This document shows positions 54,345 through 62,291 of a stretch of 64,000 nucleotides of DNA, piece after piece. Both the position numbers and the translations under genes were made by a program. The stretch spans positions 248,001 to 312,000 of the IMG/VR virus record IMGVR_UViG_3300027770_000025; one strand, given 5' to 3'. Numbering within the stretch: position 1 is the first letter of the stretch; each line of letters begins with the position of its first letter. Below the pieces are notes generated by a model. The model saw only the letters and a list, made by a program, of their open reading frames with translations. It was not told the origin of the DNA and made no database searches.

Positions 54345-56309
54345 TTATCTTTTTGGAAATTTTTGCTCAAGTGCAGAAGCAATATAATTCATATAATCTG
54401 AAGAATATCCTTGTGGTTTTGCAGTCTCGGCTACATTTTCACTCTCGTCAAGTTTTTGTACTCCAACTGTTTTAGCTCCAAGCTGACGTGTTGACCAGAA
54501 ATTTTTGATCTGATAAGGTGTATCTAAATTATAGAAGTTTGACTGAGCAACAATTGATTGCTGATGTCCTTCAGATAAAGATTCCCATACCGGAGCATAT
54601 TCTGCTGGCATTTGGTCAATAAACTTAAGACCTGTTTTAGAGGTGTCTTCTGACTCGTTAAGAGTTGTTTCGTTAGCCTTTTGTGTTTCGGCTGATGTTC
54701 TTACTGCTTTAGCAGCTTCGTTGATATTTGAAGCGGTTTTTTGTGTCTTAACCGATTCTATTAATGAATCAATCTGTGAAGTTAGGTTCTCGTAGTTTCC
54801 AGCAAAGCCAGATTCGTTAAGACCTGCTTCTGCAGATAGATTTACATTTTCTATTAATGATTGCGTAGATCCTATAGGCAATTTGTTAGCAACTGATTCT
54901 GCAATATACTCACTGTAAGCAATACCTTTGTTTAATTTCTCCGCAATGTATTCTGAATAATCTAATCCTTTATTAACATTCTCTGCTAAATAATCAGAAT
55001 ACTCAATGTTTTTGTTTAGATTCTCTGCAATGTATTCAGTGTATTCGATTCCGTTGTTTAATTTTTCTGCAACGTACTCAGTGTAAGCAATACCTTTATC
55101 TAAGCTTTCGCCAAGATATTCTGAATAAGCAATACCTTTATCTACGTTTTCTGCTAGATACTCAGAATATTGAACGCTTTGATCTAATTTTTCTGCTAGG
55201 TATTTAGAATACTCGATGTTCTTATCTACGCTCTCAGCTACATACTCTGAATAAGAAATAGATTTGTCAACATTCTCAGCTAGATATTTAGCATAAGAAA
55301 TATTTTTGTCTAGATTTTCAGCTAAATATTTACTGTAGCTAATATTGCTATCTAAGTTTTCTGCAAGATATTCGCCATACTTAATAGAATCTTCTAAATT
55401 CTCAGCTAAATATTCTGCATATTTTTCAAGCTTAGCAACTCTTTCCTCAAGAGCATCATTAGCTTTACTTAAATCTTCGGATTCGCTTAGCGATGTTTTT
55501 TGGGTTTTAGCCTCTGCGATAGCTGCTTTCATCGAATCCATTTCTTTTTTCAAGAATACTGAATACTGATTAAGCTCCTCCGCAGTAACAAATTCATTGT
55601 TCTCCATAAGGACTGATTTATTTTTATTGTCTGATTTATTCACGATTTTGTTGAATTCTTCGTTATTTTCAACTTTATATATCTTCAGTGAAGATTCTTT
55701 TTCGATACCTAAAGATTCATTTAAGCATTCTAATGAATTTAATATGCTATTATTTTTCATTGCTTGAAAATATTGAGATGTAAACCCTTCACTCTCATAT
55801 ACTCTTTCAAGCTGAGCATCCTTAAATCCAGGATCTGCTACTAGATCATAGGTAAAAATTTTCTTAATCGCCACCTTCTTATCGTTGCCAACGGATCCAG
55901 CTGCTCTTGAAGAAATAGAAAGAGGAACACCAGCATCTACTAGATTCTTAGCTATTCTACCCGCTGGGGTATCAAGAAGCTTAACCTTAATTTTAAGATC
56001 CCTATTGCTTTTGTCGTAGTTAAGATCTGTCACCATATGTGAGATATTCTTAAGTGATACGTCAAATTTCTCCGGGTGATCTAATTCTCCAACTAGTCTA
56101 TTCTGAGATATCTTATCTTTTAAATAATCTAGGTGAGGTAGATATTCGCTCTCTTCGTAAATTCTATTGTTGTTGTTCTCTTTACCGAAAACAGCAGCAA
56201 TACCTTCCAGAACGTAATCATCTTTATCAGACTTTTTAGCTTCTAGAACGGAATTCTGTCTTTCGAGGATGAATACCATGTTTTCGTTTATTGATTGCAG
56301 TTGTGGCAT
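54345..56309 (-). CDS. gp21: Prohead protease (T4 gp21-like) fused to a repetitive scaffold domain
   Basis: NNNNRIY, GELDHP, LLDTPAGRI, ISSRAAGSV and YDLVADPGF motifs, followed by 14-aa repeats; immediately upstream of the capsid gene. Confidence 0.92.
   Translation of the reverse strand: MPQLQSINENMVFILERQNSVLEAKKSDKDDYVLEGIAAVFGKENNNNRIYEESEYLPHLDYLKDKISQNRLVGELDHPEKFDVSLKNISHMVTDLNYDKSNRDLKIKVKLLDTPAGRIAKNLVDAGVPLSISSRAAGSVGNDKKVAIKKIFTYDLVADPGFKDAQLERVYESEGFTSQYFQAMKNNSILNSLECLNESLGIEKESSLKIYKVENNEEFNKIVNKSDNKNKSVLMENNEFVTAEELNQYSVFLKKEMDSMKAAIAEAKTQKTSLSESEDLSKANDALEERVAKLEKYAEYLAENLEDSIKYGEYLAENLDSNISYSKYLAENLDKNISYAKYLAENVDKSISYSEYVAESVDKNIEYSKYLAEKLDQSVQYSEYLAENVDKGIAYSEYLGESLDKGIAYTEYVAEKLNNGIEYTEYIAENLNKNIEYSDYLAENVNKGLDYSEYIAEKLNKGIAYSEYIAESVANKLPIGSTQSLIENVNLSAEAGLNESGFAGNYENLTSQIDSLIESVKTQKTASNINEAAKAVRTSAETQKANETTLNESEDTSKTGLKFIDQMPAEYAPVWESLSEGHQQSIVAQSNFYNLDTPYQIKNFWSTRQLGAKTVGVQKLDESENVAETAKPQGYSSDYMNYIASALEQKFPKR
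54897..55421 (-). repeat. Coding tandem repeat, 42-nt (14-aa) unit, 13 copies
   Basis: Y(S/A/T/G)(E/K/D)Y(L/V/I)(A/G)E counted 13 times at 14-aa spacing. Confidence 0.9.
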
Positions 56310-58999: not shown

Positions 59000-59809
59000 T
59001 TATTTTTCTGTGTATATTTTATCGTAAGACTCGGAATTTACATCTATTAACTTTTCTATATATCCCTCGTTTCTAAGCTTCTTAAATGTTAAATTCCCTA
59101 TAGAGAACTCACCATCTTTACTTAATCCCTCTTTTCTCATCTTCATAATTTTCTCTTTCAGCTTAGTACTTCTCTTATAAAGCTCTTTTGCATTGTGTGG
59201 TAGAACTGAAGAAGCTACTAGTCTAGTGTGAAGCTGCTCAATCTCGTATGCCATAGCCTCGAATTTTTTATTCACATCCTTCTCGTCTATCTCTGGCGGA
59301 TCAAATACTGGGTTCTTTATCCATTCGTTATTCAGTAGAGAAAATAATCCAGATGAGTTATGGGGGAATTTAGCATCCTGTATATAAAGCTCGACGTCAT
59401 ATCCTCGAATAGCTACATTATGTCTTAGATTCCATATGAATCTAATACCATCTAAAGCTGATTTAAGTATCTGAGGATTTTCATCATCAATCCCCTCAAG
59501 ATTAACTATAACATGAACGTCAAGATCTGATAGATTTGTGTAATTGAAATTGGCTAGTGATCCGGTTAATTGGATATCGACTATATCTTTCTCTTTAAGT
59601 ATTTCGCCGAACTTTTTAAAAAAATCACCTGCTATCCTAAGAAGTTTTTTTCTAACCCTCTGGTCTAATGTCCATTCAATATCATCTCCCTTGGTTTTCT
59701 TAGTCCAAAAAATAGGGTTTAGCTCATCGTGATAGAATGGATTTACCTGTCTCTCTAGTATAGGAGAAGATAAGTTAATGTAATTTTTATAAGATAATAC
59801 TGAACCCAC
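59000..59809 (-). CDS. Pol-beta superfamily nucleotidyltransferase
   Basis: LTGSLANFNYTNLSDLDVHV (GS...DxD) plus VELY. Likely GTG start at 59809, downstream of GATATATA. Confidence 0.8.
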   Translation of the reverse strand: MGSVLSYKNYINLSSPILERQVNPFYHDELNPIFWTKKTKGDDIEWTLDQRVRKKLLRIAGDFFKKFGEILKEKDIVDIQLTGSLANFNYTNLSDLDVHVIVNLEGIDDENPQILKSALDGIRFIWNLRHNVAIRGYDVELYIQDAKFPHNSSGLFSLLNNEWIKNPVFDPPEIDEKDVNKKFEAMAYEIEQLHTRLVASSVLPHNAKELYKRSTKLKEKIMKMRKEGLSKDGEFSIGNLTFKKLRNEGYIEKLIDVNSESYDKIYTEK

Positions 59810-59826
59810 AAAAAAAGCTTTTCTTG

Positions 59827-59918
59827 TATATATCAAAGAAAAGCTTTAGATGTTATTATAAACTGAATATTTAGCTAGGGAAGCATACCTTTAGCATAAC
59901 TTCCATTACTGTACTAAC
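59827..59918. repeat. 92-bp direct repeat, copy 1 (3' end of exonuclease gene plus late promoter)
   Basis: Identical by eye to 60595-60686. Confidence 0.9.
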
Positions 59919-59985
59919 TCGAGAAGATAGTAGGGAAAGAGCTGTTAACTAATTCTCTTGCTTGGTCTAATGTGCGTTTTTCCAT
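59914..59985 (-). pseudogene. Truncated gene fragment (MEKRTLDQARELVNSSFPTIFSS*)
   Basis: ATG with an A-rich leader after a terminator; the frame stops as soon as it enters repeat copy 1. Confidence 0.5.
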
Positions 59986-60055
59986 TTTGTATATAGTTTT
60001 AATTGGTTATGAAGTAAATGTACAAATCCCCTACGTAGGAAAAAACCCTAGGCAC

Positions 60056-60087
60056 AAAAAAAATCCCTGGGGGTTACCAGGGATTTT
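60056..60087 (-). terminator. Intrinsic terminator
   Basis: aaaatccctgg-gggtta-ccagggatttt hairpin with U-tract after the 156-aa gene. Confidence 0.85.
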
Positions 60088-60104
60088 AATTTAATTTATT
60101 GGAA

Positions 60105-60575
60105 TTATCTCCCGAAATAATCTTTAACCTCTTTTGCGGTAAGAAGTTCATATTCAGCATAACCATTCGTTAAAACTAGAAATTTTCCGTTTGGTATGGT
60201 GAAGACAAAACTATCGTCCAGTACTTTAAAATTATCACCTATTTTATAAAGATCGAAAACCCCCTCGCTAAAGCAAGCGAATTCAAAAGTATCCCCCAAA
60301 GATGGAAATACCTGTATACTTATTTGACTGGCGTAATCGGCTCCATATACATCGTCTTTCGATACAAATTGTTCTAACTCTCGTAGGTAAGCTGCCTCTG
60401 ATAGGCTATTTATGGTACCAACTGCTAATCCGCCACCGCCCATATCGGCTATACAAATTACCCCGTTCCTGTAATCATTAGAACCTTCTCTAAAACCTGC
60501 ATTAGGGTTAGGTGTTCCAATTCTTGGATCTTCTCTGAAAGATTCAAATTGTGCAATGTGTTTTGTTCTGTTCAT
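60105..60575 (-). CDS. Hypothetical protein with capsid-targeting-like N-terminus, inside the repeat-flanked insert
   Basis: MNRTKHIAQFESFRED; GATATATA at 60595-60602. Confidence 0.65.
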   Translation of the reverse strand: MNRTKHIAQFESFREDPRIGTPNPNAGFREGSNDYRNGVICIADMGGGGLAVGTINSLSEAAYLRELEQFVSKDDVYGADYASQISIQVFPSLGDTFEFACFSEGVFDLYKIGDNFKVLDDSFVFTIPNGKFLVLTNGYAEYELLTAKEVKDYFGR

Positions 60576-60594
60576 TTTTAGTTATTATTTTACC

Positions 60595-60686
60595 TATATA
60601 TCAAAGAAAAGCTTTAGATGTTATTATAAACTGAATATTTAGCTAGGGAAGCATACCTTTAGCATAACTTCCATTACTGTACTAAC
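60595..60686. repeat. 92-bp direct repeat, copy 2
   Basis: Identical by eye to 59827-59918; overlaps the true 3' end of the exonuclease gene. Confidence 0.9.
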
Positions 60687-61346
60687 ATCGAGTTCACAGT
60701 ACGTTTTAATGTTTTCATAGTCTTTATCAATCCAGAATGAATCATTTACTTTGGATCCGTCCATTATTCCCTTAGGCGATTCTATACCAAGAGAACAAGA
60801 AAGAAGATCCAGGCTTAAGTATTTTTGATGTGTCCAGCTACCGAAAGCAAACACGTCTGATGTATCAACATACGGAATCTCCCATGGCTTCTTGTCCCAG
60901 ATTCTAATATTTGCTGGCGGATTGATTCCATTATAGACCATTCTTTTACCTAAGCAGGGAACGTCAAATCCTTTTATATTATGACCGCACAACTTCCAAT
61001 TTTTTGAAGCTGCATTATTAAGCACCTTAGCTGTTTTAGTTAGAATGTCATGCTCATCGTCCCCGTAGAAAGATGCGAATCTCACCTCTCCTATATCAGT
61101 AAATGATCCAAAAGAAACACACACAACTCTGGAAAATTCAGGCTCTAATCCAGCCTTTTGTTTATAAATAGTTTCAGGATCTTCAGCAGATAATGACGGA
61201 TATGCTCCAAGATAATATGCTTCCCTCTTTTTCCATAGCTGCCATAAACGGGGATTAGCATCATGTAATGTTTCGAGATCCTTATAAAGAGCTGCGGTCT
61301 CAACATCAAAATAAAGATATTTATAAATGTCTTCTTTTTTAAACAT
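60639..61346 (-). CDS. 3'-5' exonuclease related to the PolB proofreading domain (DEDDy)
   Basis: Exo I LYFDVET, Exo II GHNIKGFD, Exo III YCELDV. Confidence 0.88.
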   Translation of the reverse strand: MFKKEDIYKYLYFDVETAALYKDLETLHDANPRLWQLWKKREAYYLGAYPSLSAEDPETIYKQKAGLEPEFSRVVCVSFGSFTDIGEVRFASFYGDDEHDILTKTAKVLNNAASKNWKLCGHNIKGFDVPCLGKRMVYNGINPPANIRIWDKKPWEIPYVDTSDVFAFGSWTHQKYLSLDLLSCSLGIESPKGIMDGSKVNDSFWIDKDYENIKTYCELDVSTVMEVMLKVCFPS

Positions 61347-61391: not shown

Positions 61392-62291
61392 TTATTTCTT
61401 CGAATTTTTATTTATTACTATAGGGGGAAGAGATTTATGATCCATTCTGTATTTTAAGCATGCATCTTCTCTTGCTGGGGATTCTATGATTACGTCTATA
61501 TCCAAGCCGAATGTTGGTATCCTTCTTTTGAGGTATTCTGATTGCTTTGGTATAGATGGTATTCCATAAGCATCACATTCTTGTGACTCTGAATGTATAA
61601 ATACAGGTTTTTGCCCAGCCTTCCAGGTTGAGCAGGAAAGAAAAAGGGCTTCTCTTATACTAAGTCCACCATCATTAAACTGATGTGGCAATAGCCTAAA
61701 ACATATTGGAATATTAGATCTGTAGTAAATACCAGATAGAAGATCAGTAACTGAGAAAAGACTGGGTTTGTCATCATTAACAACACAAAGTTTAGAAACG
61801 ACTGTACTGTCCATCTCCGATAATCTCTCACAAAAGAGATCCATAGTATTTCTTCTATTTCCATAAGCTGATCCAACTCTAACCATTATAGACGGGTAGT
61901 TAATCCCAATTAAATCCAGAATGCTAGATAGTCTGGATAGTAACGATATTGTAGAGCTCTTAATATTATCCAATTGCGTACCTAAGAAATATTCCCTGTT
62001 TATACATAGAAATATTCTGAGATCATTTTTAGTTATTGCCGAATTTATCTCATCGATTATATTCGATACAGGGGATTCTTCCTCTATTACCTCATTAAAG
62101 AAATTTGGTGAAAATTTAAAATTACATACATCTATACATGTGATCTCTATATCGAGCTCAAGATTTAATTTTATATTATCTCTAATTACACAGAGAAACT
62201 CCTCATATGAATTTATCGGGTAGTTTATATCATATGATTCAGAGTGTGGACCTATATAAGATAATTTCGGTGGCGTTTGTCCTAATATCAT
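61392..62291 (-). CDS. uvsE: UV-damage endonuclease (UvsE/UvdE)-like protein, catalytically degenerate
   Basis: VGSAYGNR, NDDKPSLFSVTDLL, IPICF, EALFLSCSTW and HSES follow the UvsE motif order, but several metal ligands are replaced. Confidence 0.75.
   Translation of the reverse strand: MILGQTPPKLSYIGPHSESYDINYPINSYEEFLCVIRDNIKLNLELDIEITCIDVCNFKFSPNFFNEVIEEESPVSNIIDEINSAITKNDLRIFLCINREYFLGTQLDNIKSSTISLLSRLSSILDLIGINYPSIMVRVGSAYGNRRNTMDLFCERLSEMDSTVVSKLCVVNDDKPSLFSVTDLLSGIYYRSNIPICFRLLPHQFNDGGLSIREALFLSCSTWKAGQKPVFIHSESQECDAYGIPSIPKQSEYLKRRIPTFGLDIDVIIESPAREDACLKYRMDHKSLPPIVINKNSKK

What the first reader, a model, noticed from the sequence alone, without database searches (positions are those of the whole stretch)
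59827..60686. 92-bp direct repeat flanks a 676-bp insert: gene capture that duplicated a late promoter
Both copies contain the last 15 codons and stop of the exonuclease plus GATATATA. Between them lie a 156-aa gene with a targeting-like N-terminus, its terminator, and the first 23 codons of another gene cut off at the junction. The junction shows CTCGA microhomology (CTCGAGTTAG vs CTCGATGTTAG on the minus strand). The inserted gene thus gains a late promoter while the nucleotidyltransferase keeps one. Recombination between the copies could excise or amplify the cassette. No integrase or transposase is visible.
Basis: seen in the sequence. Interest (0 to 1): 0.6.

Follow-up and report, generated by a model that had tools for sequence, protein, structure and literature searches.

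The report
Captured gene cassette in jumbo phage
A 676-bp piece carrying one small late gene was copied from the variable small-gene region of a related giant phage and joined in between two conserved genes of this phage at matches of only 9 and 5 bases, duplicating 92 bp; it is a real, unusually well documented, but mechanistically ordinary example of how phages pick up extra genes.

Summary
Two 100% identical 92-bp copies (59827-59918, 60595-60686) flank a 676-bp insert. The window comes from a 348.6-kb T4-like jumbo phage related to Bacteroidota huge phages.

- **Empty site:** 56 of 62 related IMG/VR loci have the exonuclease directly followed by the nucleotidyltransferase. These include 98-99% identical strains, one from a metagenome that also holds the cassette allele.
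- **Donor:** related phages carry a p156 homologue followed by an intact 124-aa gene that starts with the truncated peptide. Homology to it stops exactly at both junctions (TGATATATA on the left, CTCGA on the right).
- **Not an artefact:** contigs from five other metagenomes are 100% identical across the cassette, and four of them span both repeats.
- **Secondary spread:** a distant lineage carries the same right junction, including a foreign window-clade exonuclease fragment, but a different left junction.
- **Promoter:** GATATATA precedes sheath, portal, protease, fibre and lysin genes, so it is a late-type promoter. p156 already had one, and the promoter core was the crossover point.

Verdict: a moron-like cassette captured by microhomology-mediated recombination and polymorphic in the population. 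The cargo's function is unknown, though it may be a packaged protein. Read mapping could not be run.

The parts
60595..60686 (-). 92-bp repeat, copy 2 (upstream on the coding strand). It holds the last 15 codons plus stop of the exonuclease, the 5' arm of the hairpin, and GATATATA (60595-60602).
59827..59918 (-). 92-bp repeat, copy 1 (downstream). It holds a non-coding remnant of the exonuclease 3' end, which supplies the TAG that ends the truncated gene, plus the hairpin 5' arm and GATATATA (59827-59834).
59919..60594 (-). 676-bp donor-derived insert. It is 87-94% identical in DNA to the p156 / 124-aa-gene locus of related phages, and the homology ends at both borders.
60595..60603 (-). Left junction: the 9-nt microhomology TGATATATA, shared by the recipient's intergenic element and the donor's p156 promoter.
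   Evidence: empty site L003, donor L067 and the window compared
59919..59923 (-). Right junction: the 5-nt microhomology CTCGA, between codon 22 of the donor's 124-aa gene and the exonuclease. The recipient's T after CTCGA is missing.
   Evidence: CTCGA occurs only in the window/L003 lineage.
60639..61346 (-). 3'-5' exonuclease (PF10108 DNA_pol_B_exo2), 235 aa, intact.
60105..60575 (-). p156, the cargo gene. It belongs to a family of about 61 clusters, all hypothetical. The N-terminus (residues 1-13) is conserved, followed by a disordered linker and then an alpha/beta domain with no known fold.
60060..60087 (-). Intrinsic terminator of p156: 11-bp stem followed by a T-run.
   Evidence: (-16.6 kcal/mol, z -4.4)
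59996..60028 (-). Early-region-type promoter/leader element brought in with the truncated gene (GATTTGTACATTTAC at 60014-60028, TAACCAATTAAAAC at 59996-60009). It is the only copy outside genome positions 74-91.5 kb.
59914..59985 (-). 5' remnant (22 donor codons, plus 1 hybrid codon and a stop) of a 124-aa gene that is intact in related phages.
59814..59847 (-). 12-bp-stem hairpin with GATATATA in its loop, followed by a T-run. This terminator/late-promoter composite is conserved in diverged relatives and is complete only at copy 1.
   Evidence: (I8)
59000..59809 (-). Nucleotidyltransferase-like gene (weak PF01909; phrog_36119), 269 aa from the conserved GTG start.

Best explanation
The insert is a moron-like gene cassette: late-type promoter, p156, terminator, then the promoter and first 22 codons of the next gene. 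It was copied from the variable small-gene region of a related jumbo phage and placed between the conserved exonuclease and nucleotidyltransferase genes of the window's lineage.

Shown: the donor locus, the empty site, and both novel joints, which sit at microhomologies of 9 nt (TGATATATA, the late-promoter core) and 5 nt (CTCGA).

Inferred: the two joins landed 92 bp apart on the recipient, with the return point upstream of the exit point. This fits two template switches, or two illegitimate crossovers among replicating genomes, and it duplicated the exonuclease 3' end plus the promoter.

Consequences (inferred):
- p156 is driven by a hybrid late promoter.
- Exonuclease transcripts now run into p156 and stop at its terminator, because copy 2 lacks the hairpin's 3' arm.
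- The intact hairpin at copy 1 still insulates the nucleotidyltransferase, which keeps its own late promoter.

The cassette is a presence/absence polymorphism in the natural population. It has also been re-joined into a distantly related lineage, using the conserved hairpin as the right-hand homologous crossover.

The 92-bp repeats allow precise loss, or re-insertion, by homologous recombination. That step is inferred and no excision product was seen.
For: **Repeat and anatomy:**

**Empty site:** 56 of 62 relatives have exo followed directly by NTase, including L003/L004 at 98-99% nucleotide identity.

**Donor:** the order DUF932 - 51-aa ORF - p156 - 124-aa gene is found in L067, L068, L069, L073 and L074. 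Homology with the window runs over 60603..59919 only.

**Independent assemblies:** L099-L103, from five other samples, are 100% identical to the window. L099, L100, L102 and L103 span both repeats with unique flanks on each side. Sample 3300028394 yields both the empty allele (L003) and the filled allele (L100).

**Second lineage:** L060 and L072 come from two samples and have exo only 63% identical to the window's. They carry the same right junction plus a window-clade-like exo 3' fragment (95% identical, against 73% to their own exo). Their left junction differs: TATGAAA microhomology, 87 nt further into the donor. Their right boundary lies in the conserved hairpin.

**Promoter class:** GATATATA occurs in 55 of 409 upstream regions against 2.4 expected. 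It precedes the sheath, portal, S77 protease, neck, fibre and lysin genes.

**Module behaviour:** in L070 the p156 module is bounded by the two promoter motifs.

**Own genome:** it has the small-gene region but no p156 or 124-aa gene there.
Against: - Junction coverage, allele ratio and circular or amplified forms are therefore untested.
- The order of events is unresolved. The shared right junction with two different left junctions means at least one left junction is secondary. The window's copy may have arrived by homologous recombination from an unsampled cassette-bearing strain rather than arising in situ.
- Diverged patches lie near, but not next to, the cassette (NTase 59250-59750 at 89.8% and exo 61000-61250 at 92.4% identity to L003). 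They hint at such exchanges.
- Promoter, terminator and 'late' timing are sequence predictions only.
- The six samples may come from one site or time series.
Confidence: 0.8

Rival explanations
1. This concerns the last step only. The copy in this genome was not made in situ. It arrived either by Campbell-type integration of a small circle (768 bp = one repeat plus the insert) or by double homologous crossover from another cassette-bearing strain. The microhomology joins would then have happened earlier, in a different genome.
For: - Both copies are 100% identical to each other and to the single copy of the empty-site strain L003. The same segment in L060 differs at 4 of 92 positions, while the adjacent 239 nt of the cassette show 0 differences.
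- The right junction is shared but two different left junctions exist.
- Mosaic patches are present in both flanking genes.
- There is a precedent in PeSL mini-circles of T4-type phages (PMC2839356).
Against: No circular or excised form was observed. The left junction lies exactly at a 9-nt microhomology with the donor, which is also what a de novo join predicts. With only 92 nt, the statistics are weak.
Confidence: 0.25
2. Assembly artefact: a chimeric join or a strain-mixing error at the 92-bp repeat.
For: The 27-mer across the left junction occurs only in the window's own contig among the JGI metagenome contigs scanned. A 92-bp repeat is shorter than many assembly k-mers and read lengths, so graph ambiguity is possible. 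Reads were not checked.
Against: - Independent assemblies of five other samples give contigs 100% identical to the window. Four of them span both copies with unique sequence on both sides.
- The right junction also occurs in a different genomic background in two further samples.
- Junction microhomologies of 9 and 5 nt are too short for k-mer-based mis-joins.
Confidence: 0.02
3. A self-mobile element (a transposon with a target-site duplication, or a homing-endonuclease cassette).
For: Direct repeats flank the insert. A second small cassette in the genome is flanked by a perfect 43-bp direct repeat.
Against: - There is no transposase, integrase or nuclease domain: p156 has no Pfam, PHROG, NCBIfam or PADLOC hit.
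- There are no terminal inverted repeats.
- Duplications of 92 and 43 bp are far longer and more variable than transposase staggered cuts.
- One end of the insert is a truncated gene.
- In donors, p156 is a resident gene in a conserved context.
Confidence: 0.03
4. p156 was ancestral between exo and NTase and was lost many times.
For: Two divergent lineages carry it at the same place. The 92-bp repeats would allow precise loss.
Against: - 56 loci across the whole tree lack it.
- The insert ends in a truncated gene that is intact in the donor context.
- The distant lineage carries a foreign (window-clade) exonuclease fragment, which only transfer explains.
- p156 is absent from three complete relatives.
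Confidence: 0.04

Closest known systems
Phage morons. [quoted passage not shown] The original description by Juhala/Hendrix (2000) is recalled from memory.
   Same: An extra ORF with its own predicted promoter and terminator sits between two genes that are adjacent in 56 relatives. No mobility enzyme is present.
   Different: Morons were defined in temperate phages and are often expressed from the prophage. Here the phage is a lytic-type T4-like jumbo phage, the promoter is a late-type one, and donor, empty site, both joints and a 92-bp target duplication are all identified.
PeSL (promoter-early stem-loop) cassettes and mini-circles of T4-type phages (Arbiol et al. 2010, PMC2839356; Comeau et al. 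2014, PMC4122927)
   Same: - Composite promoter/stem-loop motifs mark the places where modules are exchanged.
- The donor region is a hyperplastic array of small genes, each behind a repeated promoter element.
- In L070 versus L067 the p156 module is bounded by promoter motifs.
- Direct repeats flanking an ORF could excise it as a circle.
   Different: - The motif used is the 9-nt core of a late-type promoter lying in a hairpin loop, not a roughly 100-bp sigma70-like early PeSL.
- The right joint is in coding sequence (CTCGA), so that join is illegitimate rather than PeSL-homologous.
- The target lies in a conserved core block, not in a hyperplastic region.
- Mini-circles were not tested.
Microhomology-mediated template switching or illegitimate recombination (MMBIR/FoSTeS-type models, recalled from general knowledge; for phage mosaicism see also PMC2327257)
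   Same: There are two novel joints at 9 and 5 nt of identity, one base is lost at one joint, and the recipient segment between exit and re-entry points is duplicated.
   Different: The mechanism is inferred from the product only. The enzymes involved are unknown.
T4 internal proteins carrying a capsid targeting sequence (CTS) (PMC9026906, PMC3012670)
   Same: - p156 is small, late-promoter driven, sporadically distributed and highly exchangeable.
- Its conserved N-terminal peptide has aromatic residues three apart, followed by a variable disordered linker.
- The genome encodes a gp21-type S77 prohead protease.
- The same kind of N-terminus is found on 34 of 52 GATATATA-driven ORFs.
   Different: There is no sequence homology to IPI-III. 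Packaging and cleavage are untested. This comparison concerns the cargo's function, not the rearrangement.

Membership tests
Moron | The segment is present here but absent between the same two genes in related phages. | tested here: met
   56 of 62 related loci have exo directly followed by NTase, including strains 98-99% identical to the window.
Moron | The ORF is flanked by its own promoter and terminator. | tested here: met
   GATATATA lies 19 nt upstream of the ATG, both here and in every native context. A strong intrinsic terminator lies at 60060-60087. These are sequence predictions only.
Moron | Composition differs from the flanks (a frequent but not obligatory feature). | tested here: not met
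   The insert has GC 0.364, against 0.34-0.37 in the flanking genes. This is expected because the donor is a related phage.
PeSL-mediated modular shuffling | A repeated composite promoter plus stem-loop motif is found at module borders. | tested here: inconclusive
   The left border lies in the promoter core, inside a conserved hairpin loop. The right border lies in coding sequence. The donor region has about 20 repeated promoter elements.
PeSL-mediated modular shuffling | Exchange occurs by homologous recombination between two flanking PeSLs. | tested here: not met
   The original joints share only 9 and 5 nt. Only the secondary transfer into L060 used a conserved element, the hairpin, as one crossover.
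PeSL-mediated modular shuffling | Circular excision products (mini-circles) exist. | not testable with these tools
Transposable element with target-site duplication | A transposase or integrase, terminal inverted repeats, and a short duplication of fixed length. | tested here: not met
   No such domains, no terminal inverted repeats, and a duplication of 92 bp.
T4-type late promoter (a single -10-like 8-mer, TATAAATA in T4; recalled) | An 8-nt AT-rich motif, without a -35 box, lies upstream of virion and lysis genes. | tested here: met
   55 of 409 upstream regions carry the motif against 2.4 expected. Among the 12 of 20 scanned GATATATA-driven proteins that got a PHROG annotation, nine are virion or lysis proteins: sheath, neck/connector, protease, portal, three fibre-type proteins and two lysins.
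T4-type late promoter | Late timing and dependence on a gp55-like sigma factor. | not tested
   There are no transcript data, and a gp55 homologue was not searched for.
CTS-bearing packaged internal protein (for p156) | A conserved N-terminal targeting peptide and a gp21-type protease in the genome. | tested here: inconclusive
   The motif [LIVMT]xx[FY]xx[FYLW] occurs in the first 16 aa (IAQFESF in p156). It is enriched 13-fold among GATATATA genes, P = 2e-15. Residues 1-13 are conserved and residues 1-32 have pLDDT below 50. Peptidase_S77 scores 31.1 bits. Presence in virions is not testable here.

The most novel reading that the evidence does not exclude
In this family of Bacteroidota-type jumbo phages, the late-promoter core, often embedded in a terminator hairpin, may act as a portable recombination site analogous to PeSLs. 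Through it, genes for N-terminally tagged, probably capsid-packaged and ejected, proteins would hop between hyperplastic regions and conserved core positions and between lineages only about 60% identical. Small repeat-flanked circles might be the vehicle. The 92-bp and 43-bp repeat-flanked cassettes would then be two footprints of one recurrent process.
Probability: 0.2. Interest if true: 0.65.

Novelty: new member of a known kind. Interest (0 to 1): 0.45.

Why it matters
Phage genomes are mosaics, but the individual events that build them are rarely caught with every component in hand. This case has:
- the donor locus;
- the empty target;
- both novel joints;
- the duplicated target;
- co-occurring filled and empty alleles in one natural sample;
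- a secondary transfer of the same product into a lineage only about 60% identical.

It shows that, in uncultivated T4-like jumbo phages related to Bacteroidota huge phages, a 9-nt promoter core is enough to seed a join, and that a conserved promoter/hairpin element then serves as a landing pad across lineages.

It also gives three working definitions for a phage group with no cultured member: a late-type promoter (GATATATA), an early-region promoter array, and a candidate N-terminal targeting motif.

Tried and rejected
- **Read mapping:** Junction support therefore rests on independent assemblies.
- **Function of p156:** there were no hits in Pfam, PHROGs, NCBIfam or PADLOC and none by tblastn against cultured phages. 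The AF2 model (pLDDT 71.5) has no match in PDB by Foldseek (best E 0.19), by VIA-align wide (best Z 3.4) or in the ESM Atlas (TM 0.33 or less). The atlas feature search gave only a sub-threshold PP2C lead (0.84), which is not adopted.
- **Donor search by the 23-aa peptide:** the query was too short for the search for related loci. A degenerate 14-codon DNA pattern found only L060's contig. The donor was found instead through p156 homologues.
- **Donor in the same genome:** rejected. Neither the peptide nor p156 occurs elsewhere in the 348.6-kb genome.
- **Donors' whole records:** they could not be searched for exo/NTase.
- **Right-junction 20-mer in IMG/VR:** found only in L060's contig.
- **The 43-bp repeat's 38-mer:** no match in IMG/VR.
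- **Literature:** a search for GATATATA as a phage late promoter found nothing relevant.
- **Not used or not encountered:** the large representative-protein search was not needed. Only genetic code 11 was used.

Full report
**1. The observation**

The window is positions 248001-312000 of a 348,582-bp IMG/VR virus record, identical to JGI contig Ga0209086_10000002. The repeat finder gives two 92-nt copies, 59827-59918 and 60595-60686, 100% identical and 768 nt apart. They are the only copies in the genome. Apart from one 43-bp pair, this is the only long perfect direct repeat.

All genes in this region lie on the minus strand:
- UvdE-like endonuclease, 61392-62291;
- PF10108 3'-5' exonuclease, 60639-61346;
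- a 156-aa ORF (p156), 60105-60575;
- a 23-codon ORF, 59917-59985, that ends at a TAG inside copy 1;
- a nucleotidyltransferase-like gene (NTase);
- an 874-aa acidic protein.

Copy 2 contains the last 15 codons and stop of the exonuclease plus 44 nt ending in GATATATA. p156 is followed by an 11-bp-stem terminator with a T-run at 60060-60087 (-16.6 kcal/mol, z -4.4).

**2. What kind of genome this is**

GC content is about 35%. The genome encodes a T4-type portal (Portal_T4, 191 bits), a gp21-type prohead protease (Peptidase_S77) and a T4 neck protein, as well as a long tail sheath, fibres and lysins.

The portal is closest to the uncultured huge phages LR756500-504 (up to 43% identity) and to the Prevotella Lak megaphages (35%). 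The exonuclease is closest to those huge phages and to Cellulophaga and Flavobacterium phages. The window therefore comes from an uncultivated T4-like jumbo phage. Its host is probably a member of the Bacteroidota; this is inferred from relatives only.

**3. The empty site**

A scan of IMG/VR with the exonuclease returned 62 related loci.
- In 56 of them the NTase gene starts 35-90 nt after the exonuclease stop.
- Two loci end too early to tell.
- Three are too distant.
- One (L060) is filled.

The nearest relatives, L003 and L004, are 98.3-98.7% identical to the window in DNA on both sides. They carry a single copy of the 92-bp segment that is 100% identical to both window copies.

**4. The donor**

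p156 belongs to a family of about 61 protein clusters, all unannotated. On long contigs (two 331-kb records, L067 and L068) and several short ones, the homologue lies in an array of small genes in the order DUF932 - 51-aa ORF - p156 - 124-aa gene. The 124-aa protein begins MEKRTLDQARELVNSSFPSIFSKEDV, which makes it the intact version of the truncated ORF.

DNA homology between the window and this locus (87% to L067, 94% to L073) covers window 60603..59919 and stops there at both ends.

A three-way comparison of empty site, donor and window shows the two joints:
- **Left joint:** within TGATATATA, which is present both downstream of the exonuclease and upstream of p156 in the donor.
- **Right joint:** within CTCGA, which is shared by codon 22 of the 124-aa gene and the exonuclease. 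One T of the recipient is lost.

CTCGA occurs only in the window/L003 lineage; other relatives have CTTGA or CTGGA.

The window's own genome has a homologous small-gene region at 74-91.5 kb, but it holds no p156 and no 124-aa gene. p156 is also absent from five relatives' records, three of them complete.

**5. Reality of the structure**

I did not try another route.

However, the exact p156 protein is on record on six contigs from six JGI metagenomes. The five that are not the window's own (L099-L103) are 100% identical to the window over 915-4166 nt. L099, L100, L102 and L103 each run from unique exonuclease sequence through copy 2, the insert and copy 1 into unique NTase-side sequence.

Junction identities of 9 and 5 nt are too short to create k-mer mis-joins. 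The right joint also exists in another genomic background in two further samples (see section 6). An assembly chimera is therefore very unlikely.

Metagenome 3300028394 produced both the empty-site contig L003 (68.6 kb) and the filled contig L100. Both alleles therefore co-occur in one sample.

**6. A second lineage with the same product**

L060 (IMG/VR 3300012017) and L072 (ENA ERZ28593823) are 98.6% identical to each other. They belong to a lineage whose exonuclease, NTase and 874-aa protein are only 63%, 59% and 43% identical to the window's. Their nearest empty-site relatives are L033 and L034.

They contain a 795-nt stretch that is 97% identical to the window's cassette. It includes the same truncated gene, the same CTCGA+GTTAG joint, and a fragment of a window-clade exonuclease 3' end. 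That fragment is 95% identical to the window's exonuclease but only about 73% identical to their own. They have no direct repeat.

Their left joint is different. The donor-derived part reaches 87 nt further upstream, into the 3' end of the donor's 51-aa ORF. It is fused inside their own exonuclease's last codons at a TATGAAA microhomology, which changes that protein's C-terminus. Their right boundary lies in the conserved hairpin and T-run upstream of the NTase.

The right joint therefore arose once, in a phage with a window-clade exonuclease. The product has since been re-joined on its left side at least once and has been moved across lineages.

Which left joint is older cannot be decided.
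- Of the 20 differences between the window's and L060's cassette, all lie in the first two thirds of the donor-derived segment (19 of them within p156), and at most of them L060 agrees with the donors.
- The next 239 nt are identical.
- The 92-bp segment then differs at 4 positions.

This pattern is compatible with later recombination or gene conversion in either lineage. In L072 the truncated ORF has accumulated several further substitutions, as expected for a dead remnant.

**7. The motif**

GATATATA is the most enriched 8-mer upstream of ORFs: 55 of 409 upstream regions against 2.4 expected, and 77 sites in the genome. It often directly follows terminators. It lies either 4-7 nt or 16-30 nt before the ATG.

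Twenty GATATATA-driven proteins were scanned. The annotated ones are the tail sheath, a neck/connector protein, the prohead protease, the portal, three fibre-type proteins and two lysin-like proteins, plus one helicase, one metabolic enzyme and one protein with only weak matches. By association it is therefore a late-type promoter, comparable in form to T4's TATAAATA (recalled from memory). Timing was not measured.

p156 carries this motif in all of its native contexts. It therefore did not acquire a promoter; the promoter core was the crossover site.

**8. Regulatory consequences (inferred)**

At the empty site and at copy 1, the motif sits in the loop of a perfect 12-bp hairpin followed by a T-run (59814-59847). 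This is the strongest such hairpin in the genome, and it is conserved in relatives whose coding sequences have diverged to about 60%.

Transcripts coming from the exonuclease would contain both arms and could terminate there. Transcripts starting at the motif would lack the 5' arm and read on.

Copy 2 has only the 5' arm and does not fold. Exonuclease transcripts should therefore continue into p156 and stop at its terminator.

The cassette also imported the promoter/leader element of the truncated gene (59996-60028). About 20 copies of this element class precede the small genes at 74-91.5 kb, and this is the only copy elsewhere. Its TAnnTTTG-like box resembles the Bacteroidota -7 element (recalled from memory). 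Transcripts from it would meet the intact hairpin before the NTase.

The NTase probably starts at the conserved GTG at 59809, because the TTG frame is not conserved in L033. JGI calls it as 269 aa.

**9. The cargo**

p156 has no family, defence-system or fold match. Residues 1-13 are conserved, residues 14-33 are variable and gapped, and residues 1-32 are modelled with pLDDT below 50.

Its N-terminus (IAQFESF) fits the motif [LIVMT]xx[FY]xx[FYLW] within the first 16 residues. This motif occurs in 34 of 52 GATATATA-driven ORFs against 45 of 357 others (odds ratio 13, P = 2e-15). The control, residues 41-56 of all ORFs, gave 21 of 409.

The phage has a gp21-type protease. In T4 a 10-residue N-terminal capsid targeting sequence, with key residues 4 and 7, directs diverse internal proteins into the head (PMC9026906; PMC3012670). 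I put this at roughly 40%. It is not needed for the main conclusion.

**10. Mechanism and comparison with known systems**

The product is what a moron is defined to be (PMC3029335). The joints are classical illegitimate joins at microhomology.

The duplication follows if the re-entry point on the recipient (CTCGA) lay 92 bp upstream of the exit point (TGATATATA). This would happen with two template switches in one replication event, or with two crossovers involving different recipient molecules.

The setting resembles the PeSL cassettes of T4-type phages (PMC2839356, PMC4122927). The donor region is a hyperplastic array of promoter-flanked small genes. In L070 versus L067 the p156 module is bounded on the left by GATATATA and on the right by the early-type promoter. 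The secondary transfer also used a conserved promoter/hairpin element.

It differs from PeSL exchange in three ways: the original joins share only 9 and 5 nt, one of them lies in coding sequence, and the target lies in a conserved block.

There is no transposase, integrase, homing nuclease or terminal inverted repeat. The insert's GC content equals that of its flanks.

**11. Verdict**

This is a new, very well documented member of a known kind of event. Interest is moderate.

Read mapping is the main check left undone.

Noticed in passing
G000:C1:74400-91500 (outside the window); one copy in the window at 59996-60028: About 20 copies, all on the minus strand, of a composite element: a T-run followed by ATCCC, then CTTATATTTGCAT, then TAACCAATTAAAAC, ending 8-12 nt before the ATG. 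Each precedes a small gene. This is a PeSL-like early-region promoter array. Its TAnnTTTG-like box resembles the Bacteroidota -7 element (recalled).
   Followed up: partly
G000:C1:80350-80777 (outside the window): A perfect 43-bp direct repeat (80350-80392 and 80735-80777) flanks a plus-strand 100-aa gene (80427-80729). The gene is preceded by TGATATATA and sits among minus-strand genes. This is a second repeat-flanked cassette with the same architecture. A 38-mer of the repeat has no other match in IMG/VR.
   Followed up: partly
Whole genome; in the window for example p156 (60105-60575) and NTase (59000-59809): An N-terminal motif, typically MKNLKxFxxFxE and generalised as [LIVMT]xx[FY]xx[FYLW] in the first 16 aa, occurs on 34 of 52 GATATATA-driven ORFs against 45 of 357 others (P = 2e-15). 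It is a candidate capsid-targeting or propeptide signal for the S77 protease. The NTase N-terminus (from the GTG start) also fits it.
   Followed up: partly
Whole genome (list): At 19 of the 60 GATATATA sites that precede an ORF, the motif ends only 4-7 nt before the ATG. This implies leaderless or nearly leaderless late mRNAs.
   Followed up: no
window 59250-59750 and 61000-61250: Against the otherwise 99-100% identical empty-site strain L003, two patches are much more diverged: 89.8% identity in the NTase gene and 92.4% in the exonuclease gene. No better match exists among the sampled relatives. These are mosaic tracts from an unsampled lineage on both sides of the cassette, though not adjacent to it.
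   Followed up: partly
window 59809-59836: The ORF list starts the NTase at a TTG that overlaps GATATATA. The conserved start is the GTG at 59809, after the hairpin's T-run. In L033 the TTG frame is closed, and JGI aa.
   Followed up: yes
G000:C1:158269-158434 and 160187-160352 (outside the window): A 166-nt direct repeat, 97% identical, covers the promoter and the signal-peptide-like 5' ends of two paralogous minus-strand genes. They are separated by a GATATATA-driven plus-strand gene whose upstream region is also duplicated at 156276. This looks like a tandem duplication of a divergent two-gene unit.
   Followed up: no
G000:C1:1400-6850 (outside the window) and window 54897-55421: Long internal tandem repeats occur in two places. 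One is about 5.4 kb of 70-81% self-similar sequence beside the collagen-like tail-fibre gene. The other is a shorter repeat array in the C-terminal half of the 654-aa prohead-protease gene (offset self-matches).
   Followed up: no
L073:2530-3000, L075, L076: In some donor-type contigs a 74-aa ORF just upstream of p156 is a diverged partial paralogue of p156 (about 73% DNA identity). p156 therefore also duplicates in tandem in its native region.
   Followed up: no
L072:5590-5660: In the second member of the distant cassette-bearing lineage, the 23-codon remnant has several substitutions (it reads MEKCTLDQAKELVNNFSPSIFAS) and the joint reads CGCGA+GTTAG. This is consistent with neutral decay of the truncated gene.
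   Followed up: yes
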